This document shows, one piece after another, positions 41,759-64,000 of a DNA stretch of 64,000 nt. Below the pieces are notes generated by a model that saw only the letters and a program-made list of their open reading frames with translations, had not been told where the DNA came from and ran no database searches. Origin of the DNA: Paragordius varius (lineage: Eukaryota > Animalia > Nematomorpha). The first letter of the stretch is position 1, and each line of letters starts with the position of its first letter. Made by a program: the position numbers and the translations under genes. Location of the stretch: positions 10,354,001-10,418,000 of the forward strand of contig OZ176051.1 in assembly GCA_964247055.1 (NCBI GenBank). Reading direction: 5' to 3'.

Positions 41759-43126
41759 TCATATATCAACAACCATTTTTTTGTCAACATCCAAATTGCC
41801 AACGACCTATATAAATACAGGATGAAAAATTAATGTAACCATTTTTTGTAATTTAGGCTAGATAACTAACTAATACATAGGCTCCCTTATACAGTATATC
41901 ATTATGAATTATATTAACTTCATTTCCTTACCATATAATATATATAAAAAATGTATGTTAAAACTAATATGACATATTTCATCATAAAAATAATTAATCA
42001 TTTTTGTGTGTCCAAACATAATTTAGCTTGGCACACATATTAAAACATTATTTTCTGAAAATTTCACTCTAAAATAGGCATAAAATATAATCATCATTCC
42101 TTTTAAAAACTTTATTAATAAAAGTAAACAGATTAGGATTGTATGAATTCTACATTAAACCATATTAAATAAAAAATATAAAATAAATGGTAATATATTT
42201 GGCTAGTATAATTAATATGGAAAAAATATCTAAAACCGATGATTTTCATTTATAGGTGAAAAAAATTTTAATAAAATTATTCATAATTAATTTTTTAACA
42301 TAAATAATAAAAATCGCTAATAAACTAAAATATAAATGATTAACCATTTAATGTCGAATTAACAACACAATCTAAATGTTTAGCGTATCGTTTTTAGCCA
42401 CATAACAAATGTTTTTATCAAACACACAATTAAACTTAATAAGCGATTAACATGGTAGAAATAATTATTATTATTAAATGCATTTATTTGTTTTTCAAAC
42501 AAAAAATAAATAAATTGCTCATTTTTATTTATAAAAAAACAAATTATACCGCACAAAATTCTTCGTAAGATATTTTTCCATCCCCGTCTTTATCGGCATT
42601 TATAATCGTTTTATCGACAATTTGTTGTAATTGAGTATCTTTGAGATTGCTTCCAACCATCATTTTAAGTACGGCAAATAATTCGCCATTTGATATGAAA
42701 CCATCCTTATCAATGTCATATATTTTGAATGCAACTAAAATAAAATCAGTTAAATATAAAAATCAATTATATTAAATATATAAAGAATACGTACATTGTA
42801 GCTTGCTTTCTTTGTCACTTTTGACGCTAAACTGTGATATACCCTCAATGAACTCTAAAAAAATTAAGATTAAAATATGTACCTTTAAAGTCAACTTCTC
42901 CGTTGCCGTCGGTATCAAAAATTTGAATAACTCTTTGGACAAGTGGATTCTGCTGAAGTTCTGGTAATGACATGAATTCATCCACACTAAGTGAACCGGA
43001 ATTATCGGTATCAAGTTTTTTAAATCGTTTACCCAACCGTTTAATTTCTTCAACATCAACTAAAATATATATTATAGTCTTACAATGTGAGCAAAGCTCA
43101 AGTTGAGCCGATATGTCGTTTCCCAT
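41759..43126 (-). CDS. PPP3R1: Calcineurin subunit B (four EF-hands, myristoylation Gly2)
   Basis: Exons 43126-43084, 43059-42883, 42854-42795, 42734-42550 and 41806-41759 give [31 protein letters not shown]...[20 protein letters not shown], closely matching CNB. Confidence 0.97.
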
Positions 43127-46340: not shown

Positions 46341-48401
46341 TTTATTTTTAAGGCGAAATTAAAGCTATTATTTATTTAAATAACATTTAACATTGGTAGA
46401 AATAGAAAAAGTGGTTTATTTTGTATTATTTTTCAATTTTTCCAACGCGTTACGACTAAATTTTTACCTTTGGTTTCTGATTAAAATAGGTAATATCAAG
46501 TATTTTAAAATAAGTTTTTGCATATTTCCATTTATTAATGTTATATTTTGCCATGGTTTCGATTCCTTCCATATTTTTTAAAGTATTTAATTTTGAAAAA
46601 TCCGAAGTATTCAACTAGCCCAATTCGAATCGAAGGAGTAAAATGAATGTGTAATATTCAAGTGTTTTTGGAATCGTTTCCAACTAATCCATATTTTTTA
46701 AATGTTTGATTTAAAGTGTGGGGTCCGTGACCCTGCTTTAAATTGAAGGACTGAAATGAATGTGTAACATCAAAATGTTAATAAGAAGGCTTAAAAAATA
46801 GAATACACTGCGTCCAATTTAGAGGATTATAAAAATATCTTGATAAAAATATTTTCTGATAAAAAAATATCGGGATTATCAAAGAACTAAACTAGACCTT
46901 AAATATTTTTTTAATATTAGAATTTAAATGGCTTTGGAATATGAAACTACCCCAAAGTCAATCTTATATAAGCCGAATTTAAAAATATGCTTACTTCAGC
47001 CTTATATTATGGTTGAAAAACGTTAATCACACTTCATTTCGGGCAGGTTTTATATCACAGCGAAATTTGAAAAATATAAAATTATGGAATTAAGCCCAAA
47101 TTATAAATATGCTTTATTTAGGTAGGTGGACAAAAAATTTTTTTAAAAAAAATATATTTGTAAATCCTCATCTCAAACTTTTTCTCCGCCATTTGTTCCT
47201 TAAATTTTTTAAATCGTTAATAAAACAGCTATATAAAAATTTATGATTAGAAAATGTAAGTAATTTTTAATCACCTTTCAAGTTGCATATACTAGCAAAA
47301 ACCTAATATTTATTGACAGTAAAAGCGGTTTAGGTATATCGTGTTTTGAAGCTGCCCCGATTTAGGCTTAGAAGCAAAACTCTAAAATATACAAGATTTT
47401 GATCAAATGAAAGAATAATGTTTATTTTAACAAATCTTAAAAGAGTAGTTTATTGACATAAAGATCTCGGTTATAAAACTACCCAATATGTCATCACGGA
47501 CAGAACAGTGAAAATGTAACAAAGTGTTAACTTTAATCCGTGACCTTATGGGGTAGTTTTGCCAGAGCGAGAAATTCCAATATTTTAAAAAGTATTTGAG
47601 GTATTATGACTCATTACCTTTGGAGGTAGTTTAAATCCCGAAAAGATTTTAGTTTGACTATAAAGCCGAAGTTCTAAATATGCTTTTTTAACCTTTTACC
47701 GCATTATACAATTTATATAAAAAAACTGTAAAATTCTCATCTCAAACTTTTTTGGTGCCATTTTTTTCAATTTTTTTACCTCGCTATTGCAACAGGCAAA
47801 TATATATATTATAATATATGTAAATAATTAACTTTAAAAGGATTTCATACATTTTATCAGCAGCTGTTCGTTTCAATCGTGTTTTGGAGATGTCCCAATA
47901 TTGGACTTTAGAGTCACAAAACTTAAAAAATATAATTTTTTATTCTAAAACAAACCATATTTACACAATTGAGCTTAAATATAAACCCAATATATTAACA
48001 AAAAAGAAGTGTAAAGCTTTCACACATTTTACCAAAAATGATAAAAAAAATTGCTAAAAGCTAAATGCCTCATTCCAAAAATATCACTATATCGCAATAT
48101 TTTTATACAATTGTAATATTTTTACAGTGTCTACAAAAAATTCCCTGATAAAATATATATAAATATACATATATTAATGTGACCAGATATTTAGAACCAT
48201 GGCGCAGTACAAAATTAAAACATACTTTGCCTATTTTTTAACCGGATTTTTGGCGTTTTATATTAAATGATATTGTTCGTTACTATTTATAAGCTCATTA
48301 GTAATAATTAAAATATCCAACAATAAATTTATTAAAAATTTAATATAAATGTATGTACATATAATTATATCATATGTTATATATATGAATATATAATAAT
48401 A

Positions 48402-51400
48402 CTAGCGTAAATCTCGTGCTGCTACGCAGCCCGAGGAAGTTCTTCGGACTAGTGGGGATATTTAAAAAAAGGGACAATAAAATGATCCACATATGTGGAT
48501 TATTTCTATTTCTAAACATTATTTATTAGCTATGATCTCATAGGAATTTCAAAACGGTGCATTCATACTAATATATTGTTTACTTGGGCGAAAAATAATT
48601 CCAACAATTTGAATTTTTTGGAAAAATGGCATTTTACGGGAGGAGCGGATAAAAAGAGGGCCTTAATTAAAAAAGCGAGCGGATTATGTTCGGCGCAATC
48701 GAATATGAGTAAACAAAAATCATATTTATAATTGAATAGTCCAACACGTCCAGAAAATTCTCTCAAAGACACGATTTTTGTGGACTTCTGTTTTTAAAAA
48801 AAACCGTTTTTTACACGGGGTAGGCCCGAACTGGGGGCCTTATTCAAAAAAGGGCAAAGATATTGTTGAAGCATTCATTAATGATTATATTTTTTCGACA
48901 TTTGGATTTGAATGGATCTACCGGTTTCCCGGAAATAGATCACCAAGCCTAATGTGACCAGATATTTTGAACTTTGACGCAGTACAAAATTAAAATATAC
49001 TTTGCCTGTTTTTACACCATCAATGTGGTATATCACACAGTTTGCACAAAAAATATCCAGATGAAATATATATATTCTAATAGGAAAATATCAGGATTTT
49101 CATGGTGCTTTTGATTAAATTTAAAGATATGGGCTTTGAAGGTTGCAATTTTTTTGGCTCTTTTAAAATGGACTGTTCTCTTATAATCAACGCAAAAATT
49201 CCGACATTGTGCAATAAATTAAATATATGTTAAATTTTGATATCGACTAAATATATTTTTAATTTTGGCAAAATTTTGTTAAAAGTACTTCATACTATTT
49301 TGAGCATGATGGACACGATATAAACGGTTGAGATGTTATACACTGTAAATATATAATTCGAACTCAGAATTTTGATTAAAATATTCGTTCATTATCAAAG
49401 TTATGTTAAATAAAAATTGTGTTTTTTACAAAAATTCACCAAAATTTGAAAGCAAACAAACCTTTAAATTAAAATTCTTAATGTTTAACATCATCATTGA
49501 GAAAAGGGTTTTATTATATCTTAAAGCATTATACCGTTTCCAACATGCTTCAAAATCGTTAGTAGTACGCTTCAACAAAATATCTCAAATTTGTTTATAA
49601 GAAAATTAAAAATTAAAGTTTAGAAAAAAAAATTAAGTTATTACATACCTCCCATCTAATGAGTGTAGAAAACGAAAACTCTTAATTTTGTAATACGAAT
49701 AAAAAAGGTTATTTCGAAATCATATGCCATTTATAATAAATTTAAAATCCGTTTGATAATTATAACAAAAATGAGCTTTTTAAACTTGAACAAACATTTA
49801 TTAAAATATCATAAATTAATTTATTAATTTTAAATTTTGAGGCACCTCTTTTTGCGGAAGCCCTGAGCGAAAGAGCTATTAGCCCGAATCTAACGGTGGC
49901 CGAGATTTATATTTCGCCACTGCGCGAAAGGCTGCAATCATAAGCGGTTTGATCGATCCAAAATCCAATTATATGCATAACACTGGACAACAAATTTTTA
50001 TGCCATTCGAGTTTTTTGAATTTTCTGATATTTAGTATCATTTTAACAGAAAATCTGAAATAAAAATTACAACTCGTTGGAAGAATTTTGTATAATTTGA
50101 TTTTTTTGATTATGCGCCCTCTTTATCATTTACTAAAAAATATTTTTCTTTCAAAATATACAAGTAATGCCCATTTGTAATATATCATTCGAAAGAGTAA
50201 TAAAAACTCTATAAAATGCATACTAATATGTATTACATCGACAGTTAATATTGGACACAAAGAGCGACAAACGCGCGAAGCGAGAGCATTTTTTTAATTA
50301 TTATATTTTTAAAACTAATAGATGAAAATAGCTCAAATTTTGTTTAGATGGTAATGAATGTCCAAAAAAGATAACACAAGAAAGTTCTTTTGATTAAAAC
50401 ATTTTTTTATTGCTTTTATGTCACTCAAAACAGCCATTTTTAAGTTTTTTGTTTTTTAAAAACTACCATCTCATCAATATTAATTTATTTTCTTTATAAT
50501 GCTGATAATTTCGAAATTTTAAAGATAAAAACAAAGTTTAAGGTATTTTTGATCTTTTATGGCCATTATGAAATAAATTTACAGTTATAACTATGCATTT
50601 TAGTATCCACTAGGTAAAATATTTATGATAATAATAATTTTTATTAAAAAAGCAAGCCAAAAGCTTTTTCAAACATTTTTTTAAATTAAATACTAATATA
50701 ACCCTAATAATTATATTAATATAATTTATATGATTTTCAAATTTTGTCTGTGAAAATTCTTGACTTATTTATGGATTGAAAATTTCGACCATTTAAATCC
50801 AAATAACTTTTACATCCGATTGATTTAAATGACTTACTACCATTTAAAAGATGCAGTATTTTGCGCTCTTTCGAATGATATAAAATAATAGGCTTCATAT
50901 CTAAAACTTTTAATTTTCGAAATTTCGAGTTTATTGTTAAATCGGGGCCAAAAATTTTCGATAAACTCTAAAATAAAAAAATTCTTCCATGCTAGACCAA
51001 TTTTCTTTTCAGATATACTAATTATGTACTTTAATGAAATAAATTTTAATACAAGAATGGCAGTTAAAAAAAGTTTGTTGTCTAGTGTAATTCGAGCAGA
51101 AAATAAAATATTAACCAATAAATAGGCCAATCTTATTTTACCGCAATAAATTATTACTTTACAAATTATGGGGTATTTTTACAAAGGTTACTATTTCAAA
51201 TTATAAAATATTTTTTTTGAATAAATAAAAGATAATTAATATATATCCATAAATAAATATTTTTTTTAATTTCAAAAAGCAGTACAAAAGTAGGCGCAGT
51301 ACAGTCGCAGTTTTTTTCTGAAAATCCAGTACTGTACTGCGAAAAACAGCCTATCTGGTCACATTAACCAAGCCACTACTTTCCATTTTTATAAATATAT

Positions 51401-51403
51401 AGA
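48402..51403 (-). mobile_element. Non-autonomous Helitron (~577 bp native) nested in the outer hAT
   Basis: Minus strand A|TCTATATATTTATAAAAATGG...CTCGGGCTGC-GTA-GCAGCACGAG hairpin, 7 nt, then CTAG|T. No TSD, A|T target. Confidence 0.88.
48950..51366. mobile_element. Non-autonomous hAT (same TIR family), inner element inserted in the Helitron
   Basis: Perfect 15-bp TIR TAATGTGACCAGATA. Perfect 8-bp TSD ACCAAGCC at 48942-48949 and 51367-51374. Confidence 0.92.
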
Positions 51404-53872
51404 TTATAATGGTATGTTTGTTTTAAAAAATGCTAATTGTCAAAAACAATATAATTACCAATATATGATAATAAAAATAGAGGGAAACAATATATCTGGT
51501 TTTTATAAGATGTTGCCGTGCAGATAAAATCATTCACACACGATCTTATAAAAGTTCTCTTCCATAGCTTTTTAGAAAAATTACTATTTGACAGCAGGTA
51601 AAACTATGCGTTGATGAAAAAAAGATAGGTAAATGGATAGAAAATTATTCAAATGCCGACTTTGCTACAGTGTAAAATTCAAAAATAATTCAAATAGTTC
51701 TGAGTCTACCCAATGAATGGTATATGACGTGACATAATTATTAATAAATAATATTTTTTTATAATAGTAATAATAACTAAAAATAATAAATTATATATAT
51801 TTTTCAGATTTATGTATTTGTCCCAATAATTTATGGTTTTGCGAAATTTTTTCTAAAGAAGCTTCACAATTTTCTTCTGTATTTTTGACTATTTTGCTTT
51901 CAAAGTATATATTGTGAGTTGTGTTTTTCAGTAGTCCATATTTTGTTTATAGGAAAAGGCACGGAAAAGAAAATTAAAATGGAATTAATGAAAAAATTAT
52001 TGTGTGTGCCAAAATTAAAATAGGTCTATAAAATTGTTTATGCACAAAAGAATGAAAAGACTGGCTAAAAATTAAAGTTTAAGGAAGCAAAAAATTAAGG
52101 AACATACCTCCCACCCAAAACATAAAAAGTTGTTTTTTTTCCTAGAAAAAAAGGTTATATCGAAACTAAATATAATGAATTTTAAAAAGAATATGTTGCG
52201 GAAATAAAAAAATTTTCCGTTTGATAATTATAATTAAAGTAAACTCAAATAAATTTAATTTAGCTGAAACTTATATAAAACAAGATGAATTTTCAAAAGA
52301 TAAAATTACTGAAATATTAATTTATTTTTTGTTTATTTTTGAGGTCGCTTTTGCGGAGCCCTGATTGAAAGGTTGGCCTAAATCTGGAATCTTATATTGA
52401 TAGTTCCGTCACTTCGCGAATGGCTGCATTCATAAGCGATTTGACCGGTCCAAAACCTAACTCCATGTATAATTAGAGCAGAAAATAAAATATTAAAATT
52501 AAAGGCCATAGTTTTTTACAGTTAAAAAAAACCATTTATTTATTTTAACTAAGGGTGCTCTATCGAATTCTACAAACATAACTTGTAAAAATAAATGGTA
52601 ATTAAAACATATTTATAAAAAAAAATTTCAAAAAGCAGTACAAAAGTCAGGGCAGTACAGGCGCGGTTTTTTTTCGAAAACCCAGTACTGTACTGCGAAA
52701 AACAGCCTATCTGGTCACTTTAACATATATATATTTAAAAGAAAATGTATCAGGATTATCATGAATTTTTTGGTTTCGGCCCTTTGAAGAGTTTAAAGTT
52801 ATTTAAACTCTTGTAAGTGCACAATATCAGAAAATGGTATATATGTGGTATATATTTTTTTGGTCCAAGATAAACGCATTCCAAAAATATCAGTCAAATA
52901 CATCATAAACAATATATAGAAAGCAAAAATATCATTTAACACTTTTAATTTTTAGATGTGGCCTTCAAAAGTCCTAATTTTTTTCGCTCTTCTAAAATAA
53001 GGTGTTTCTCTTAAAAGCGTAATAGGCCGAATTTTTAAAATATTGAGCTTGGTACCTAAAATTTTGAGTTAAACCATTCGCTCTTATATCACTCTGTTAT
53101 TATTTTACCACAAATTTAGCATATTATTATTATAATAATTATTATAAATTATTTTCGATTATTTATTCTAAGCTACGCCAGATTTATTACGAAAGTGTTG
53201 GTTTTATATTTTGCACTATTTTTTAAATTGAAACATTATCTGCTTCAGTATCCATCAGGGATTCTTGGTGAATATCTCTCCAAACTGCGTCACGTCTTGC
53301 TCATTTTGTTAGGAGCCCCTCGGCAAATATAATGCTATGTTTATAAAATAAATAACAATATATCATATTTTTAATATATTATAATGGGATGAAAGAACCT
53401 TTAGTGATAAATTTATATAAACTGATTGGCAATTTAAACAGAAACATGTTGTCAGATAGATATAATTATCCATTGATTTTAAGATATTTTAGTCAATTAC
53501 ATTTAATAGTAATTAATTGTTAGTCAGGCTAGGAAATAGTTATAATAATTTTTAGATATACTTTTTCGGATTTCATCGCTTTATAATTTATCATTAAAAA
53601 TATAAGGAATTTATAATATTATTCGAAATATTTTGGTAATCAGTCAAAAAATTGCTAATTGAACAAGTTATGTATTGTTACAAACAAAATAAATTATTTT
53701 GTTTTTAAATGATTAACAAATTTTCAAATATGTACCGTTAGTTTCAAAGTGATCAATAAAACAAATTTCTTTTGATAATAATAATAATCACACTATTCAC
53801 AAAAAAACTTAATTTTTTGTGGGATGTTTATAATGAGTTCAAAATATATCTGTGATTTTATTTTATTGAGAA

Positions 53873-56800
53873 CTAGCGTGAATCTCGTGCTGCTACGCAG
53901 CCCGAGGAAGTCCTTCGGACTTCTGGGGGGGGGGGGGGGGGGGTCGAAGTTTGGATTTGAATGGGTCTACCGTTTTTCCTGTAGATCACAAAGCCAGCAT
54001 TTTCCATTTTTATAAATAAGATTACCATAAATAATGTTTTAATATCCATATATCTTTTAACATGCTATACATATGATAGATACTCCTTACTCAGCAGCTA
54101 TCATCAAAGAAACGCTTGACTAAAATTTTTGCCTTTTAACAGGGAATACGTGGAATCTTTATTGAATTTTTACGGTCTCATACCTAGGGCGAAAAATCGA
54201 TTTAGAAAATTATTTTTGTGGACTTTGTTTTTTGAAAAAAATGGCATTTTACGGGGGGAGCGGGTAAAAAGAGGGCCTAAATCAAAAAAGTGGCTCGACT
54301 ATGTTCGGCGCAATCGAAAATAAGTAAACAAAAATTATATTTGAAATTGAATGGTCCAACACGTTCTCCGGAAAATTGTCTCAAAAACACGATTTTGTGG
54401 ACTTCTGTTTTCAAAAAAAAACCATTTTTCATACGGGGTGGGCCCGAACTGGGGGCCTATTTCAAAAAAAGGGCGAAGCTATTGTCGGGACATTTATTAA
54501 TGATTATATTTTTTCGATATTTGGATTTGATTGGGTCTACCGGTTTTCCTGTGCCAGATCACAAAGCCAGCATTTTCCATTTTTATAAATATATAGATGA
54601 GGATAAATAATGTATTAATATCCATATATCTTTTAACATGCTATACATATGATAGATACTCCTTACTCAGCAGCTATCATCAAAGAAACGCTTGACTAAA
54701 ATTTTTGCCTTTTAACAGGCAATACGAAAAATCTTTCTCGAATTTTTACAGTCTCATACCGTGGACAAAAAAATACAATCAAAAAAATATTTTTGTGGAC
54801 TTTGTTTTTTTTTGAAAAAAATGGCATTTTACGGGGGGAGCGGGTAAAAAGAGGGCCTAAATCAAAAATGTGACTCGACTATGTTCAGCGCGATCAAAAA
54901 TAAGTAAACAAAATTCATATTTGAAATTGAATGGTCAAACACGTTCTCCAAAAAATTGACTTAACCCATTTTTCACACGGGGTGGGCCCGAACTGGGGAC
55001 CTAATTCCAAAAAAGGGCGAAGCTATTGTCGGGGCATTCATTAATGATTATATTTTTTCGATATTTGGATTTGATTGGGATCACCGGTTTTCCGGAAACA
55101 GTTCACAAAGTTATAGGAAAAATCAGTTTTTAGCGGGTAGCTCCTTACCCAGCAGCTATCATCCAATAAAAGGTGGACTAAAATTTTTGCCTTTTAACAG
55201 GGAATACGTGGAATCTTTATTGAATTTTTACGGTCTCATACCTAGGGCGAAAAATCGATTTAGAAAATTATTTTTGTGGACTTTGTTTTTTGAAAAAAAT
55301 GGCATTTTACGGGGGGAGCGGGTAAAAAGAGGGCCTAAATCAAAAAAGTGGCTCGACTATGTTCAGCGCGATCAAAAATAAGTAAACAAAATTCATATTT
55401 GAAATTGAATGGTCAAACACGTTCTCCAAAAAATTGACTTAACCCATTTTTCACACGGGGTGGGCCCGAACTGGGGACCTAATTCCAAAAAAGGGCGAAG
55501 CTATTGTCGGGGCATTCATTAATGATTATATTTTTTCGATATTTGGATTTGATTGGGATCACCGGTTTTCCGGAAACAGTTCACAAAGTTATAGGAAAAA
55601 TCAGTTTTTAGCGGGTAGCTCCTTACCCAGCAGCTATCATCAAATAAAAGGTGGACTAAAATTTTTGCCTTTTAACAGGGAATACGTGGAATCTTTATTG
55701 AATTTTTACGGTCTCATACCTAGGGCGAAAAATCGATTTAGAAAATTATTTTTGTGGACTTTGTTTTTTGAAAAAAATGGCATTTTACGGGGGGAGCGGG
55801 TAAAAAGAGGGCCTAAATCAAAAAAGTGGCTCGACTATGTTCAGCGCGATCAAAAATAAGTAAACAAAATTCATATTTGAAATTGAATGGTCAAACACGT
55901 TCTCCAAAAAATTGACTTAACCCATTTTTCACACGGGGTGGGCCCGAACTGGGGACCTAATTCCAAAAAAGGGCGAAGCTATTGTCGGGGCATTCATTAA
56001 TGATTATATTTTTTCGATATTTGGATTTGATTGGGATCACCGGTTTTCCGGAAACAGTTCACAAAGTTATAGGAAAAATCAGTTTTTAGCGGGTAGCTCC
56101 TTACCCAGCAGCTATCATCAAATAAAAGGTGGACTAAAATTTTTGCCTTTTAACAGGGAATACGTGGAATCTTTATTGAATTTTTACGGTCTCATACCTA
56201 GGGCGAAAAATCGATTTAGAAAATTATTTTTGTGGACTTTGTTTTTTGAAAAAAATGGCATTTTACGGGGGGAGCGGGTAAAAAGAGGGCCTAAATCAAA
56301 AAAGTGGCTCGACTATGTTCGGCGCAATCGAAAATATGTAAACAAAAATTATATTTGAAATTGAATGGTCCAACACGTTCTCCGGAAAATTGTCTCAAAA
56401 ACACGATTTTGTGGACTTCTGTTTTCAAAAAAAAACCATTTTTCATACGGGGTGGGCCCGAACTGGGGGCCTATTTCAAAAAAAGGGCGAAGCTATTGTC
56501 GGGACATTTATTAATGATTATATTTTTTCGATATTTGGATTTGATTGGGTCTACCGGTTTTCCTGTGCCAGATCACAAAGCCAGCATTTTCCATTTTTAT
56601 AAATATATAGATGAGGATAAATAATGTATTAATATCCATATATCTTTTAACATGCTATACATATGATAGATACTCCTTACTCAGCAGCTATCATCAAAGA
56701 AACGCTTGACTAAAATTTTTGCCTTTTAACAGGCAATACGAAAAATCTTTCTCGAATTTTTACAGTCTCATACCGTGGACAAAAAAATACAATCAAAAAA

Positions 56801-59800
56801 ATATTTTTGTGGACTTTGTTTTTTTTTGAAAAAAATGGCATTTTACGGGGGGAGCGGGTAAAAAGAGGGCCTAAATCAAAAATGTGACTCGACTATGTTC
56901 AGCGCGATCAAAAATAAGTAAACAAAATTCATATTTGAAATTGAATGGTCAAACACGTTCTCCAAAAAATTGACTTAACCCATTTTTCACACGGGGTGGG
57001 CCCGAACTGGGGACCTAATTCCAAAAAAGGGCGAAGCTATTGTCGGGGCATTCATTAATGATTATATTTTTTCGATATTTGGATTTGATTGGGATCACCG
57101 GTTTTCCGGAAACAGTTCACAAAGTTATAGGAAAAATCAGTTTTTAGCGGGTAGCTCCTTACCCAGCAGCTATCATCCAATAAAAGGTGGACTAAAATTT
57201 TTGCCTTTTAACAGGGAATACGTGGAATCTTTATTGAATTTTTACGGTCTCATACCTAGGGCGAAAAATCGATTTAGAAAATTATTTTTGTGGACTTTGT
57301 TTTTTGAAAAAAATGGCATTTTACGGGGGGAGCGGGTAAAAAGAGGGCCTAAATCAAAAAAGTGGCTCGACTATGTTCAGCGCGATCAAAAATAAGTAAA
57401 CAAAATTCATATTTGAAATTGAATGGTCAAACACGTTCTCCAAAAAATTGACTTAACCCATTTTTCACACGGGGTGGGCCCGAACTGGGGACCTAATTCC
57501 AAAAAAGGGCGAAGCTATTGTCGGGGCATTCATTAATGATTATATTTTTTCGATATTTGGATTTGATTGGGATCACCGGTTTTCCGGAAACAGTTCACAA
57601 AGTTATAGGAAAAATCAGTTTTTAGCGGGTAGCTCCTTACCCAGCAGCTATCATCCAATAAAAGGTGGACTAAAATTTTTGCCTTTTAACAGGGAATACG
57701 TGGAATCTTTATTGAATTTTTACGGTCTCATACCTAGGGCGAAAAATCGATTTAGAAAATTATTTTTGTGGACTTTGTTTTTTGAAAAAAATGGCATTTT
57801 ACGGGGGGAGCGGGTAAAAAGAGGGCCTAAATCAAAAAAGTGGCTCGACTATGTTCAGCGCGATCAAAAATAAGTAAACAAAATTCATATTTGAAATTGA
57901 ATGGTCAAACACGTTCTCCAAAAAATTGACTTAACCCATTTTTCACACGGGGTGGGCCCGAACTGGGGACCTAATTCCAAAAAAGGGCGAAGCTATTGTC
58001 GGGGCATTCATTAATGATTATATTTTTTCGATATTTGGATTTGATTGGGATCACCGGTTTTCCGGAAACAGTTCACAAAGTTATAGGAAAAATCAGTTTT
58101 TAGCGGGTAGCTCCTTACCCAGCAGCTATCATCAAATAAAAGGTGGACTAAAATTTTTGCCTTTTAACAGGGAATACGTGGAATCTTTATTGAATTTTTA
58201 CGGTCTCATACCTAGGGCGAAAAATCGATTTAGAAAATTATTTTTGTGGACTTTGTTTTTTGAAAAAAATGGCATTTTACGGGGGGAGCGGGTAAAAAGA
58301 GGGCCTAAATCAAAAAAGTGGCTCGACTATGTTCGGCGCAATCGAAAATATGTAAACAAAAATTATATTTGAAATTGAATGGTCCAACACGTTCTCCGGA
58401 AAATTGTCTCAAAAACACGATTTTGTGGACTTCTGTTTTCAAAAAAAAACCATTTTTCATACGGGGTGGGCCCGAACTGGGGGCCTATTTCAAAAAAAGG
58501 GCGAAGCTATTGTCGGGACATTTATTAATGATTATATTTTTTCGATATTTGGATTTGATTGGGTCTACCGGTTTTCCTGTGCCAGATCACAAAGCCAGCA
58601 TTTTCCATTTTTATAAATATATAGATGAGGATAAATAATGTATTAATATCCATATATCTTTTAACATGCTATACATATGATAGATACTCCTTACTCAGCA
58701 GCTATCATCAAAGAAACGCTTGACTAAAATTTTTGCCTTTTAACAGGCAATACGAAAAATCTTTCTCGAATTTTTACAGTCTCATACCGTGGACAAAAAA
58801 ATACAATCAAAAAAATATTTTTGTGGACTTTGTTTTTTTTTGAAAAAAATGGCATTTTACGGGGGGAGCGGGTAAAAAGAGGGCCTAAATCAAAAATGTG
58901 ACTCGACTATGTTCAGCGCGATCAAAAATAAGTAAACAAAATTCATATTTGAAATTGAATGGTCAAACACGTTCTCCAAAAAATTGACTTAACCCATTTT
59001 TCACACGGGGTGGGCCCGAACTGGGGACCTAATTCCAAAAAAGGGCGAAGCTATTGTCGGGGCATTCATTAATGATTATATTTTTTCGATATTTGGATTT
59101 GATTGGGATCACCGGTTTTCCGGAAACAGTTCACAAAGTTATAGGAAAAATCAGTTTTTAGCGGGTAGCTCCTTACCCAGCAGCTATCATCCAATAAAAG
59201 GTGGACTAAAATTTTTGCCTTTTAACAGGGAATACGTGGAATCTTTATTGAATTTTTACGGTCTCATACCTAGGGCGAAAAATCGATTTAGAAAATTATT
59301 TTTGTGGACTTTGTTTTTTGAAAAAAATGGCATTTTACGGGGGGAGCGGGTAAAAAGAGGGCCTAAATCAAAAAAGTGGCTCGACTATGTTCAGCGCGAT
59401 CAAAAATAAGTAAACAAAATTCATATTTGAAATTGAATGGTCAAACACGTTCTCCAAAAAATTGACTTAACCCATTTTTCACACGGGGTGGGCCCGAACT
59501 GGGGACCTAATTCCAAAAAAGGGCGAAGCTATTGTCGGGGCATTCATTAATGATTATATTTTTTCGATATTTGGATTTGATTGGGATCACCGGTTTTCCG
59601 GAAACAGTTCACAAAGTTATAGGAAAAATCAGTTTTTAGCGGGTAGCTCCTTACCCAGCAGCTATCATCCAATAAAAGGTGGACTAAAATTTTTGCCTTT
59701 TAACAGGGAATACGTGGAATCTTTATTGAATTTTTACGGTCTCATACCTAGGGCGAAAAATCGATTTAGAAAATTATTTTTGTGGACTTTGTTTTTTGAA

Positions 59801-60639
59801 AAAAATGGCATTTTACGGGGGGAGCGGGTAAAAAGAGGGCCTAAATCAAAAAAGTGGCTCGACTATGTTCAGCGCGATCAAAAATAAGTAAACAAAATTC
59901 ATATTTGAAATTGAATGGTCAAACACGTTCTCCAAAAAATTGACTTAACCCATTTTTCACACGGGGTGGGCCCGAACTGGGGACCTAATTCCAAAAAAGG
60001 GCGAAGCTATTGTCGGGGCATTCATTAATGATTATATTTTTTCGATATTTGGATTTGATTGGGATCACCGGTTTTCCGGAAACAGTTCACAAAGTTATAG
60101 GAAAAATCAGTTTTTAGCGGGTAGCTCCTTACCCAGCAGCTATCATCAAATAAAAGGTGGACTAAAATTTTTGCCTTTTAACAGGGAATACGTGGAATCT
60201 TTATTGAATTTTTACGGTCTCATACCTAGGGCGAAAAATCGATTTAGAAAATTATTTTTGTGGACTTTGTTTTTTGAAAAAAATGGCATTTTACGGGGGG
60301 AGCGGGTAAAAAGAGGGCCTAAATCAAAAAAGTGGCTCGACTATGTTCGGCGCAATCGAAAATATGTAAACAAAAATTATATTTGAAATTGAATGGTCCA
60401 ACACGTTCTCCGGAAAATTGTCTCAAAAACACGATTTTGTGGACTTCTGTTTTCAAAAAAAAACCATTTTTCATACGGGGTGGGCCCGAACTGGGGGCCT
60501 ATTTCAAAAAAAGGGCGAAGCTATTGTCGGGACATTTATTAATGATTATATTTTTTCGATATTTGGATTTGATTGGGTCTACCGGTTTTCCTGTACCAGA
60601 TCACAAAGCCAGCATTTTCCATTTTTATAAATATATAGA
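53873..60639 (-). mobile_element. Composite Helitron with internal tandem array
   Basis: 3' hairpin plus CTAG|T at 53873 and A|TC 5' end at 60639, same family as 48402-51403. Confidence 0.85.
54022..60639. repeat. Tandem array of 13 monomers (576/482/478/478 bp) with a 2014-bp higher-order period
   Basis: Near-identical short ORF starts recur at spacings 1058, 478, 478. Helitron TC termini occur at 54597, 56611, 58625 and 60639. Confidence 0.95.
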
Positions 60640-61858
60640 TTCACGGAATTGATTGATTTAGGCTTTTTTATATACATTGTTCCTAAATACATTAAGCAGA
60701 GTGGAAATTTTAACATCTTCTGTATCCACCCAATTTGATAAAATTAATTTGCCAAAAATATCAAATAAACAGTTTATCACATTATACATATACTAAATTA
60801 TATATACAGTTTTCAAAACAATCATTCTATTTTTGAATCTTTAAGGTGTGCCCTACATTACGCTTGAAAAATTTTCAAATTTTGATCATATGATTATTTA
60901 TCACCTCCCAATCAAGTTTTCTTGCTTGACTTAACTCCCCTATAAATTATTTAATCACATGAAAGCAAGCCATGACTTGAAAAACTTGAAAATCAAGGCA
61001 AAATGTTTTTTTACCACCCCACCCAATATCTTAAAATTTTTTGGTTTCCACTACCTTTTGAAAAACCCTAAATGTTTTATCACATGTAAATTTTTTAGCT
61101 AAATATTTATTTTTGTGAAGAAAATTATTTTTGATCTCAAAATATAGCATACATTTAAAATTATCGACTTATCTTGGCCTTTTTGCTTTGATTCTAATAA
61201 AACGAGTTTATTTTGGACGGATCCAAAAATTTAAGGCTTTCGGAGCTCACATCTAAAATTAATATTTTTAAAAATATAGATATACATTTGAAATGTAGTT
61301 TATGATAATTTTTAGCCATTTTTGTAATAAGGGATTTAGTCTTAAAAATGCAATTTTCTCATATAAGCGTGACACGAAAGTGTTTATATCTTTCCTACAT
61401 AAGTTGTAAGACATAAAACAAAAGCACTATCAGTATCCTGTTACATTTTCCTATCAAAATATATATAATTTATCAGGATTTTTTGTAATCACTGTAAATA
61501 AATTGACTAAAATAAAATGCCCCATTTTAAATGATACCAGTAAAATACATCCTAAACGACAAAACAAATTTTTTTCAATATTCGAATCTTAAATGTGGGC
61601 TCCGAATGTCCAAATTTATGGCGCGCTTTAAAATAGGTTATAAAAAGATGCAAAGAGCCGACGATTAGTATTTTTAAATATATGCTAGATTATAAAATAA
61701 TTTTTAGCTAGAGAAACCAATTTTTAGTAAAGTTTTAGTAACTGTATATTAAGGTAATTTAAAGCACAATAAAAGCGACATTAGGACATTGTAACTTAAA
61801 AACACTTTTTCTACATAGACTAGCACCAATAATTAACCATTTTTTTATCATTTATTTT

Positions 61859-64000
61859 CCATGCTATCAAGAGTTTCACCAACAATCAATAATTCTTTTT
61901 CAACAATAAACCATCATTTTTCCAATTAATACCAATGCTATAGTTTCACCATCAATCAACCATTCTGTTATAATAATTAATATATATCATTTTCAGTTCA
62001 AATTCACTTTTAAACAATTCAACACCCTTGAATAATTCAAATTTACGCTTGAACAATTCAAATTTACGCTTGAGCAATTCTAATTTACGCTTAAAAATTC
62101 AAATTCACCCTTTAACAATTCAAATGCACCTTCAAACAATTCAAATTCACCTTAAAATAAATTGTTTTTTTTAGATTAAATATTATTTATATTTTTTTAT
62201 ATTTTTAAAAAAAGAAATTTTGTATGTAATCAAAAAAATACTAAAAAAATATAAACTTTGCAATAAAAATATATTTAATTTTAATGATGAGTTGTATTAG
62301 ACCGAAATTTCTAAATTTATTATTAGGGTGAATTCGAATTGTTCGAGGGTGAATTTCAATTCAAGGGTGAATTTGAATTGTTTAAGGGTGAATTTGAATT
62401 GTTTAAGGGTGAATTTAACCTGTTTAAGGGTGGATTTCGAATGTTGGAGTAAATTGTAAATGGTATAATTTACCGGTGGTAAAAGATTTCACCAACAATC
62501 GACCATCATTTTTCAACACAATCAATTATTTATATAGGCTATCAAGAGTTATATAAACATTGATTTTCAACAATCAAATTATAATACGCACGCTATCAAG
62601 ATTATCAACAATCAACCATTCTTTTTCAACATTAAATATGCTATTAAGAGTATCACCAGCAATCAACCATTCTATTCTAATAATAAATTATTTTACCCAT
62701 GCTATCAAGAATTTTACCAACAACCAACATTTTTTTAACAAAAAACCATTGTTTTGACCATTCATTTTCAACAATCAAAGTGTATTAACCATGTTATTAT
62801 ATGTTTCACCAACAATCAACCATCCTTTTTCAATATTGAAATAAAAATACTCATGCTAATAGTTTCAGCAACAACCAATTCTTTTTGAAACATTAATCAA
62901 ATTATTTTACCCATGCTATTAAAATTATTAACAATCAACCATCATTGTTCTTAAATCAAATTATATTACATATGTTATTCAATGTTTCACTAAAATCTTC
63001 CATTTTTATTCAGCAATTAATCATAAAACACATGATATTAAGAGTATTACCAATGATTAACTATTTTTTTATCATATTATCTATGCTATCAAGAGGTTCA
63101 TCAACAATCGACCATTATGTTTTAAAAATCAAATTATTTTACCCATGGTAAAAATTTCACCAATTATCAACCACCACTTTTTAATAATTCAATCATAATA
63201 CTCATGCTAATAGTTTCAGCAACAATTTTTGAAACAATAATCAAATTATTTTACCCATGCTATTAAAATTATTAACAATCAACCATCATTGTTCTTAAAT
63301 CAAATTATATTACATATGTAATTCAATGTTTCACTAAAATCATCCATTTTTCAGTAATTAATTATAAAACCCAAGCTATTAAGAGTAGTACTAATAATTG
63401 AACATTTTTTATTAAATTGTATCCATGTTATCAAGAACAATTCTTTTTTAACAATCAACCATTATTTTTCCACAATAAAATTATACCCATGCTATCAAAG
63501 GTTACACTAACGATCCCATTTTCTTTCAATAATCAAATTATTTTATGGTAAATGATTTCGTCAACAATCAACTATCATTAATCAACCATCAAATTATAAT
63601 ACCCATACTATCAATATTTTACCATCGATCAACAATTCTTTTTCAACAATCAAATTATATTACATGCTATTGAAGGTTTCGCCAACAATCCCATTCTTTA
63701 ATCAAATTATTTTACCCATGGTAAAAGATTTCACCAAGAATCAAACATTATTTCAACAATCAAATTATAATACCCATACTATCAATAGTTTTACCATCGA
63801 TCAACAATTCCTTTTCAACAATCAAATTATATTACAGATGCTATTAGGAGATTCAAACATTCAACCATCATTGTTCAATAATATAATTATCCATGCTATC
63901 AAGAATTTTACCAAATATATATCCCAATTATTCAACAATCAATTTATAATACCCATGCTATTTAAAGTACAAACAATCAACCATCATTGTTCATCATTCA
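61859..64000. repeat. Degenerate ~60-bp minisatellite (CCATGCTATCAAGAGTTTCACCAACAATCAACCATTCTTTTTCAACAATCAAATTATTTTAC consensus by eye)
   Basis: Recurrent CCATGCTAT and CAACAATCAA motifs up to the window end, interrupted by a MITE. Confidence 0.8.
61988..62463. mobile_element. CCATTTACAATT-type MITE with expanded 21-bp subterminal arrays
   Basis: About 7 AACAATTCAAATTCACCC-like units on the left, inverted units on the right, ending AATTGTAAATGG|TA. Confidence 0.8.

What the first reader, a model, noticed from the sequence alone, without database searches (positions are those of the whole stretch)
53873..60639. Helitron caught turning into a higher-order satellite: five 5' ends, one 3' terminator
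Seen: the monomer is homologous to the body of the single Helitron at 48402-51403. Thirteen monomers form a 4-mer higher-order unit of 2014 bp (576+482+478+478), repeated three times plus one monomer. Only the 576-bp type carries the Helitron 5' terminus (A|TC at 54597, 56611, 58625, 60639, plus 54021), and the only hairpin-CTAG is at 53873. The copies are nearly identical. Established: Helitrons move by rolling-circle replication, the 5' end is the origin, and Helitron internal repeats have seeded satellites in other animals. Inference: first the body triplicated internally, then an origin-bearing, terminator-less 2-kb unit was concatemerised. This gives a direct snapshot of higher-order repeat birth, with the period set by the replication origin.
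Basis: partly seen in the sequence, partly recalled or inferred. Interest (0 to 1): 0.75.

Follow-up and report, generated by a model that had tools for sequence, protein, structure and literature searches.

The report
Multi-head Helitron grown by unequal recombination
A 6.8-kb non-coding jumping element (a Helitron) repeats its start signal five times before one stop signal. The layout is real, but it is this family's normal build and is already known from other organisms, and the sequence shows that the recent tripling of its 2-kb unit came from misaligned recombination, not from the start signal acting as a replication origin.

Summary
On the minus strand, 53873-60639 is one non-autonomous Helitron: A|TC at 60639, two hairpins plus CTAG|T at 53873. 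Its layout is three 2014-bp units (head + four monomers + tail), one 576-bp unit, and a 149-bp head-polyC-terminator module. The three units differ at only 2 of 2014 positions.

- The multi-head layout is the family's standard build. All 29 other loci read carry at least two heads before one terminator, and there are about 1,900 first-look candidates.
- The 2014-bp unit predates this array. It occurs once at two other loci, at 97-98% identity.
- All three variable sites are staggered across neighbouring units: u3 T/A/G, u2 C/A/G, u1 C/A/T, u0 C/T. The C+A combination occurs nowhere else in the genome. The repeated unit is therefore a chimera whose breakpoint lies inside the head-D homology, not at the TC terminus.

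This fits two unequal exchanges from a progenitor [hDCBAt][hDt][mini]. A one-shot rolling-circle concatemer would need two reversions to the family consensus. The multi-5'-end, single-3'-end layout and the rolling-circle model were published for plants (Xiong et al. 2016). This scan has already reported the same family trait on other DNA of this genome. Assembly error cannot be excluded here.

The parts
53873..60639 (-). Whole composite non-autonomous Helitron (6,767 bp), inserted between A and T
   Evidence: 5' A|TC at 60640/60639 and 3' CTAG|T at 53873-53876/53872. Other family copies show the same ends in unrelated flanks. Diverged paralogues of the surrounding older repeat run across the site without the insertion.
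53873..53943 (-). 3' terminator module: 19-nt poly-C (53925-53943), two hairpins, then ATTCACGCTAG
   Evidence: Folds as DNA to -15.3 kcal/mol, z = -5.45. It is one of only two such motifs in the window. About 1,900 first-look candidates genome-wide.
53944..54021 (-). Mini head h': a 5'-terminus copy placed directly before the terminator, here with a 3-nt deletion
   Evidence: A head in this position, 90-96% identical to the outer head, is present in all 29 other loci read.
54022..54597 (-). Unit u0: head + D monomer + tail (576 bp), the family's basic unit
   Evidence: Differs from the head-D of the 2014-bp units at 1 of its first 480 nt. Carries derived C at head-45 (54553) and the family state T at D-275 (54323).
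54598..56611 (-). Unit u1: head-D-C-B-A-tail (2014 bp)
   Evidence: Site states: C at 56567, A at 56337, family state at 55642.
56612..58625 (-). Unit u2: head-D-C-B-A-tail (2014 bp), a chimera by its site states
   Evidence: Site states: C at 58581, A at 58351, derived G at 57656.
58626..60639 (-). Unit u3: outermost head-D-C-B-A-tail (2014 bp)
   Evidence: Site states: family T at 60595, A at 60365, derived G at 59670.
48402..51403 (-). Related single-monomer Helitron (577 bp without its insert): head, one monomer, own 3' spacer, terminator, no mini head
   Evidence: Alignment with u0 + mini. It falls outside all array monomers in the tree.
48950..51366 (.). Nested 2,417-bp hAT-like element inside the related Helitron
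   Evidence: 8-bp target duplication ACCAAGCC and 15-nt perfect terminal inverted repeat.

Best explanation
This is one copy of an abundant non-autonomous Helitron family whose standard build is [head - D monomer - (0 to 3 headless 478-bp monomers) - tail], repeated n times, followed by [mini head - polyC - hairpins - CTAG]. Head plus D is the 5' leader of the Rep-encoding parent element. The composite moves as a whole, from the outermost head to the single terminator. The copy at this locus most likely began as [hDCBAt][hDt][mini]. It gained two more 2014-bp units where it lies. The mechanism was misaligned homologous exchange (unequal sister-chromatid or homologue crossover, or replication template switching) between the roughly 515-bp head-D direct repeats, with one small B-to-C conversion between the two events. 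The heads mark the period because they are part of the direct repeats that misalign, not because replication starts at them. Shown: the anatomy, the family-wide layout, that the unit is older than the array, and the chimeric site pattern. Inferred: the progenitor structure, the order of events, and that growth happened at this locus.
For: Termini, A|T target and hairpins. All 29 other loci read show at least two heads before one terminator, with units of 576, about 1,055, about 1,500 and 2,014 bp mixed within arrays. The 2014-bp unit occurs once at C4 (98%, followed directly by the mini module) and once inside a mixed array at C6 (97%). B+C monomer pairs occur at 6 or more loci. Within-array identity is 99.95%, against 97-98% to other loci. 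Site pattern: head-45 is T in u3 and in 33/33 other heads read, and C in u2, u1 and u0. D-275 is A in u3, u2 and u1, and T in u0 and in 68/68 matching monomers at other loci. Genome-wide, the C+A combination exists only in u2 and u1, and T+A only in u3. At the third site, the derived G is in monomer C of u3 and u2 but not of u1; the family state is T in 21 of 22 copies elsewhere. The parental types sit at the array's two edges and the recombinants between them, as unequal exchange predicts. B and C monomers cluster by locus in all three loci that carry the unit, which indicates concerted evolution of headless monomers. Elsewhere in the genome, a 1,988-bp tandem duplication spans a family member's terminator plus 1.6 kb of flank, so ordinary duplication acts on these elements. 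Rep-domain relics carry head + D-like leader upstream.
Against: The inference rests on only three variable sites. A275 also occurs at 13 other places in the genome and C45 at 2, so neither mutation need have arisen at this locus. A misassembly across the head-D repeats would produce the same chimeras, and no reads were available. Reintegration of an excised circle by homologous recombination gives the same product. No unexpanded allele or orthologue was seen.
Confidence: 0.68

Rival explanations
1. Rolling-circle amplification during transposition. A terminator-less 2014-bp circle was copied round and round from its 5' origin, and the concatemer was integrated as one element.
For: The layout of several 5' ends and one 3' end, with units lacking the terminator, is the one that model was built for (PMC12628747). 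The units are nearly identical. The array is bounded exactly by Helitron ends.
Against: Copies of one circle should be born identical. Here the outer head keeps the family base while the inner heads share a derived one with the non-circle unit u0. A second site separates u1 from u2 and u3, again by the family base. This model therefore needs two independent reversions to consensus, or added recombination. The tail|head junction has no CTAG or hairpin at which a circle could have been closed. Most family members read have a single unit before the mini module. The Rep-domain loci found were broken wherever examined: most hits carry stop codons, and the three regions checked hold no long open reading frame.
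Confidence: 0.1
2. Circle-mediated growth. Recombination between the two head-D repeats popped out a 2014-bp circle. The circle, possibly after copying, reinserted into the same array by homologous recombination.
For: An excision between head-45 and D-275 would yield exactly the C45+A275 chimera seen in the inner units. Extrachromosomal circles are a general model for satellite growth (PMC12628747).
Against: It needs more steps than a direct unequal exchange for the same product. The two-step stagger at the third site requires two separate reinsertions. There is no direct evidence for circles.
Confidence: 0.1
3. Assembly artefact. The true locus holds fewer units, and the assembler, or a join of two haplotypes, expanded the repeat.
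For: The units are 99.95% identical over 2 kb. A false overlap within head-D would create the same chimeras.
Against: The three units are each distinguishable by their site combinations, so at least three different units exist in the data. The array is only 6.8 kb, which is short for long-read data. Other arrays of this family show similar structures.
Confidence: 0.08

Closest known systems
Tandem arrays of truncated Helitrons with multiple 5' ends and one 3' end in plant genomes (Xiong, Dooner and Du 2016, Plant J 88:1038; summarised in PMC12628747)
   Same: Several 5' termini, a single hairpin-CTRR end, repeated units that lack the terminator, and arrays of a few to many units.
   Different: Here the site pattern points to homologous unequal exchange rather than rolling-circle amplification. 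The host appears to be an animal; the evidence is an exon that looks like part of a calcineurin-B-type EF-hand gene and an earlier scan note, and the organism was not identified. The family also carries a fixed mini head directly before the terminator.
Helitron/Helentron non-autonomous elements with internal tandem repeats that seed satellites (DINE-TR1 in Drosophila; Cg170 carriers in Crassostrea gigas, PMC8268682; Xenopus Heli2Xen, PMC12001565)
   Same: Conserved ends and a variable central tandem array. The same repeats occur inside elements and as longer arrays.
   Different: In those cases the repeats are usually unrelated or captured sequence. Here the repeat is the element's own 5' leader, including its 5' terminus.
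Higher-order repeats of classical satellites (e.g. primate alpha satellite)
   Same: Two nested periods. Higher-order copies are far more alike (99.95%) than the monomers within a unit (about 81-100%). Growth is by unequal exchange.
   Different: Only 3.3 units and 6.6 kb, lying inside a mobile element. No evidence of a centromeric or other chromosomal role.

Membership tests
Helitron (Helitron1-type rolling-circle transposon), non-autonomous | 5' terminus TC and 3' terminus CTRR | tested here: met
   TC at 60639-60638 and CTAG at 53876-53873 on the minus strand. The same ends are present at the other loci read.
Helitron (Helitron1-type rolling-circle transposon), non-autonomous | GC-rich hairpin about 10-12 nt upstream of the 3' end | tested here: met
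   Two hairpins ending 11 nt before the end, -15.3 kcal/mol, z = -5.45.
Helitron (Helitron1-type rolling-circle transposon), non-autonomous | Insertion between A and T, no terminal inverted repeats, no target duplication | tested here: met
   A before the outer TC and T after CTAG at every locus read, with unrelated flanks. Diverged paralogues of the host repeat span the site without the insertion. They are too diverged (65-72%) to fix the empty site to the base.
Helitron (Helitron1-type rolling-circle transposon), non-autonomous | A Rep/helicase-encoding partner that shares the termini | tested here: inconclusive
   16 Helitron_like_N hits. At C8 a head + D-like leader, the Rep hit and a terminator lie on one strand within 11 kb. 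At C6 head + D lies 2 kb upstream of the Rep hit. No long open reading frame remains in the three regions read. The helicase domain was not searched.
Rolling-circle-amplified Helitron array (Xiong et al. 2016 model) | Several 5' ends, one 3' end, units lacking the terminator | tested here: met
Rolling-circle-amplified Helitron array (Xiong et al. 2016 model) | All repeated units are copies of one circular template, so differences should be private new mutations | tested here: not met
   All three variable sites are shared in a staggered way between neighbouring units, and each minority state is the family consensus base.
Higher-order-repeat satellite | Nested periodicity, with higher identity between higher-order units than between monomers | tested here: met
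   478-bp monomers within 2014-bp units. Units are 99.95% identical; monomer types are about 81-100% identical to one another.
Higher-order-repeat satellite | Long homogeneous array (tens of kb or more) at a chromosomal domain | tested here: not met
   3.3 units, 6.6 kb, about 10.7 kb from the calcineurin-B-like EF-hand exon, on its upstream side.

The most novel reading that the evidence does not exclude
The internal heads may be live origins. If so, any head in an array could launch a shorter daughter that ends at the shared terminator, and the mini-head-polyC-terminator module, conserved at every copy read, would be a selected minimal cis-unit rather than a founder accident. The arrays would then be multi-origin launch pads in which recombination sets how many kinds of daughter are possible.
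Probability: 0.15. Interest if true: 0.5.

Novelty: new member of a known kind. Interest (0 to 1): 0.3.

Why it matters
It gives a small, cleanly resolved case in which the two competing routes from Helitron to tandem array can be told apart from the sequence alone. Three polarised sites show chimeric units, so homology, not the replication origin, set the period. This argues for caution in reading 'many heads, one tail' arrays as proof of rolling-circle amplification. As a phenomenon it is already described, and it is common in this genome.

Tried and rejected
- Coding or RNA function of the array: the repeated 106-aa and 71-aa ORFs have no Pfam match, and the region has no Rfam match. Rejected.
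- Precise empty site: paralogues of the host repeat (L051, L052, L053) are only 65-72% identical, so the insertion point could be bracketed but not fixed to the base.
Rerun as three shorter exact patterns.
- My first attempt to extend the C6 array assumed the wrong strand and wasted one fetch. Corrected.
- The Xiong et al. 2016 paper itself is not held. Its content is cited through the review PMC12628747.
- Organism identity: not established.
- Solo 150-bp mini elements (head' + terminator alone), which a circle-splitting model might leave behind: none among the 29 loci read.
Full report
WHAT IS THERE

The window is part of a 110-Mb, 44-contig, very AT-rich eukaryotic assembly (G000:C2:10354001-10418000). 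Between 53873 and 60639 lies one element on the minus strand.

Its 5' end reads A|TC: TC is at 60639-60638 and the flanking base is at 60640. Its 3' end reads CTAG|T: CTAG is at 53876-53873 and the flanking base is at 53872. The last 73 nt consist of a 19-nt poly-C run, two hairpins, and then ATTCACGCTAG. As single-stranded DNA they fold to -15.3 kcal/mol, z = -5.45 against shuffles.

Read in element orientation, the element has three kinds of part:
- Three 2014-bp units: u3 = 60639-58626, u2 = 58625-56612, u1 = 56611-54598. Each is built head (75 nt) - D monomer - C - B - A (478-bp monomers) - tail (65 nt).
- One 576-bp unit, u0 (54597-54022), built head - D - tail.
- A 149-bp end module (54021-53873), built mini head - polyC - hairpins - CTAG.

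TRF and the repeat finder give 13 monomer copies spaced 580/478/478/478. The three 2014-bp units differ at 2 positions in total. The 21-nt head motif matches exactly at 54597, 56611, 58625 and 60639, with 0.08 matches expected by chance. The terminator motif occurs only at 53873 and, in the neighbouring element, at 48402.

- The 478-bp monomers keep a decayed head. Positions 32-75 are 82-86% identical to the head.
- Each head-bearing unit includes a 65-nt tail that precedes the next head.
- The 'single Helitron' at 48402-51403 is a 577-bp element split by a 2,417-bp hAT-like insertion at 48950-51366, with an 8-bp target duplication and a 15-nt inverted repeat.

IT IS A HELITRON, AND THE MANY-HEADS BUILD IS THE FAMILY NORM

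A search of the whole assembly with the end module gave about 1,900 first-look candidates. All 40 that were scored matched at 90-100%. I annotated the 29 other loci that were returned.

Every one ends in ...CGCTAG|T, apart from one with a single substitution just before CTAG. Every one has an outermost head preceded by A in otherwise unrelated flanks. Every one has the same architecture: one or more [head - D - (headless monomers) - tail] units, followed by a mini head directly before poly-C and the hairpins. No copy has fewer than two heads.

Units come in several sizes: 576 bp (D only), about 1,050-1,060 bp (D+A), about 1,500 bp, and 2,014 bp (D+C+B+A). Arrays mix these sizes. The C6 locus, for example, reads [hDAt][hDCBAt][hDAt][h-A-partial tail]-terminator, with a 1.1-kb TA-flanked inverted-repeat element sitting inside one head.

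Internal junctions are of two fixed kinds...CCTCA|TC and ...GGTAA|TC.

The surrounding DNA in the window is an older repeat. Its diverged paralogues run across the insertion point without the element.

The genome holds 16 Helitron Rep-domain hits, most of them with stop codons. At C8 and C6 a head plus a D-like segment lies upstream of the Rep hit on the same strand. At C8 a matching terminator lies downstream. No long reading frame survives in the three regions I read. In the monomer tree these Rep-linked leaders and the window's 577-bp neighbour branch outside all array monomers. The 'monomer' is therefore the 5' leader of the coding parent element.

THE 2014-BP UNIT IS OLDER THAN THIS ARRAY

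The full unit occurs once at C4:5972697-5974709 at 98% identity. There it is followed directly by the end module and sits in different flanks. It occurs once more, inside the C6 array, at 97%. B+C monomer pairs occur at six or more loci. The composite is therefore mobile as a whole, and the four-monomer unit was inherited, not made here.

The tree separates three groups:
- an A clade of 20 rows, support 100/99;
- a B/C clade of 13 rows, support 100/99, nested among D-type monomers;
- a D grade.

So 'the body triplicated' is too simple; at least two monomer lineages of different age are combined. Within the B/C clade, B and C group by locus at all three loci that carry the unit (supports 99/91 and 100/97, and identical sequences at the third). 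This is the mark of local homogenisation between adjacent headless monomers. It is recombination that owes nothing to an origin.

HOW THE THREE UNITS AROSE

A perfect tandem array has no readable phase, so a TC once per period says nothing about mechanism. The informative data are the few differences. I polarised each one against other family copies.

Site 1, head position 45 (window 60595, 58581, 56567, 54553):
- u3 has T, as do 33 of 33 other heads read.
- u2, u1 and u0 have C.
- Genome-wide, the C form occurs at only two other places.

Site 2, unit position 275 in D (window 60365, 58351, 56337, 54323):
- u3, u2 and u1 have A.
- u0 has T, as do 68 of 68 matching monomers at other loci.
- A occurs at 13 other places in the genome.

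Exact linked-pattern searches of the whole assembly show three things:
- C45+A275 exists only in u2 and u1.
- T45+A275 exists only in u3.
- C45+T275 exists in u0 and at one other locus. That locus is not a close relative, judged from the first 80 matched bases.

With the family's T+T, all four combinations exist. This requires recombination or repeated mutation.

Site 3 lies near the end of the 478-bp monomers (window 59670, 57656, 55642 in monomer C; 59192, 57178, 55164 in monomer B):
- The family state is T in 21 of 22 copies elsewhere.
- The derived G is in B of all three units.
- It is in C of u3 and u2, but not in C of u1.

Along the array the states read u3 (T, A, G), u2 (C, A, G), u1 (C, A, T), u0 (C, T). 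The two edge units carry the parental types and the inner units are recombinants.

This is what two successive unequal exchanges produce from a progenitor [h(T) D(A) C B A t][h(C) D(T) t][mini]:
1. The first crossover, between head-45 and D-275, joins u0's head to the outer unit's D and creates the C+A unit.
2. A B-to-C conversion, or a mutation, then marks one unit.
3. A second crossover, between position 45 and about position 970, makes the middle unit a chimera of its two neighbours.

No site needs to change twice. The breakpoints lie inside the 515-bp head-D repeat, not at the TC terminus.

A one-shot rolling-circle concatemer would be born uniform. It would need two later changes, each happening to restore the family consensus base, or else recombination on top. 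Its tail|head junction also carries no CTAG or hairpin at which a circle could have been closed.

A variant route gives the same product: a circle excised by head-D recombination is reinserted by homologous recombination. It cannot be excluded, but it takes more steps.

Ordinary duplication does act on this family. At C4:9929767 and 9931755, a 1,988-bp tandem duplication at 99.1% identity spans part of a monomer, the terminator and 1.6 kb of flank.

CAVEATS

- The argument rests on three sites.
- Neither C45 nor A275 is strictly private to this locus.
- I had no reads, and a false overlap within head-D, or a join of two haplotypes, would mimic a crossover. The three distinguishable units do at least show that three different units exist in the data.

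WHAT IS KNOWN

Arrays of truncated Helitrons with several 5' ends and one 3' end, from a few to hundreds of units, were described across 27 plant genomes. Helitron-derived tandem arrays are also reported in Xenopus (PMC12001565) and discussed for a hydrozoan (PMC11934779). Helitron and Helentron carriers of satellite-like repeats are well documented in Drosophila and oysters (PMC8268682).

Earlier follow-ups in this same scan reported the same family trait on other pieces of this genome, with 10, 16 and 25 heads, and favoured unequal recombination. I treated those as leads. My own sample of loci and the site analysis agree with them.

VERDICT

The Helitron identity and the order of events are right. 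The mechanism claimed, with the period set by the origin, is not supported; homology-driven unequal exchange is the better reading (about 0.7). It is a new member of a known kind and of modest interest. Its value is as a compact example in which chimeric units decide between the two models.

Noticed in passing
window 48950-51366 (a further end of the same element near 48176): A 2,417-bp hAT-like element with a 15-nt perfect inverted repeat (TAATGTGACCAGATA) and an 8-bp target duplication (ACCAAGCC) is nested in the neighbouring small Helitron. A second copy's end lies just upstream of that Helitron.
   Followed up: partly
window 60641-61040; L044-L048: The DNA abutting the Helitron's 5' end belongs to an older repeat of about 400 bp to 1 kb, with 363 first-look candidates at 72-82% identity. 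At another locus (L046) a head of the same Helitron family also abuts this repeat, about 45 bp further out, which may hint at a target preference.
   Followed up: partly
window 42845-43126 (-): An open frame with EF-hand pairs (Pfam E = 1e-10) that looks to me like the first coding exon of a calcineurin-B-type gene. The array lies about 10.7 kb away on its upstream side.
   Followed up: partly
L023 / L031 (G000:C4:9929767 and 9931755): A 1,988-bp tandem duplication (99.1% over 1,878 bp) spans part of a monomer, the tail, the mini head and the terminator of a family member plus 1.6 kb of flanking DNA. This duplication is not bounded by Helitron signals.
   Followed up: yes
L005:3520-4637 (G000:C6, inside the third head of that array): A 1.1-kb element with 20-nt inverted repeats (GGGTGGAGTGAATAAAAAAA) and a TA target duplication, of Tc1/mariner MITE type, interrupts a Helitron head four bases after TC.
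   Followed up: no
G000:C4:10508089-10513387: Six units carrying the A275 variant are spaced alternately 1057 and 1052 bp. This suggests a second higher-order (two-unit, about 2,109-bp) array of the same family. The sequence could not be fetched.
   Followed up: no
window 61997-62156 and 62325-62442: Two short arrays of the same 21-bp unit in opposite orientation (7.9 and 5.7 copies), about 170 bp apart, in a foldback-like arrangement. Further 117-344-bp tandem repeats follow at 62804-63993.
   Followed up: no
G000:C8:~2816973-2828141 (-) and G000:C6:~4225544-4228304 (+): Decayed Rep-encoding Helitron relics carry this family's head and a D-like leader upstream of the Rep domain. At C8 the family terminator lies downstream. 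These are candidate parent elements. Their reading frames are broken.
   Followed up: partly
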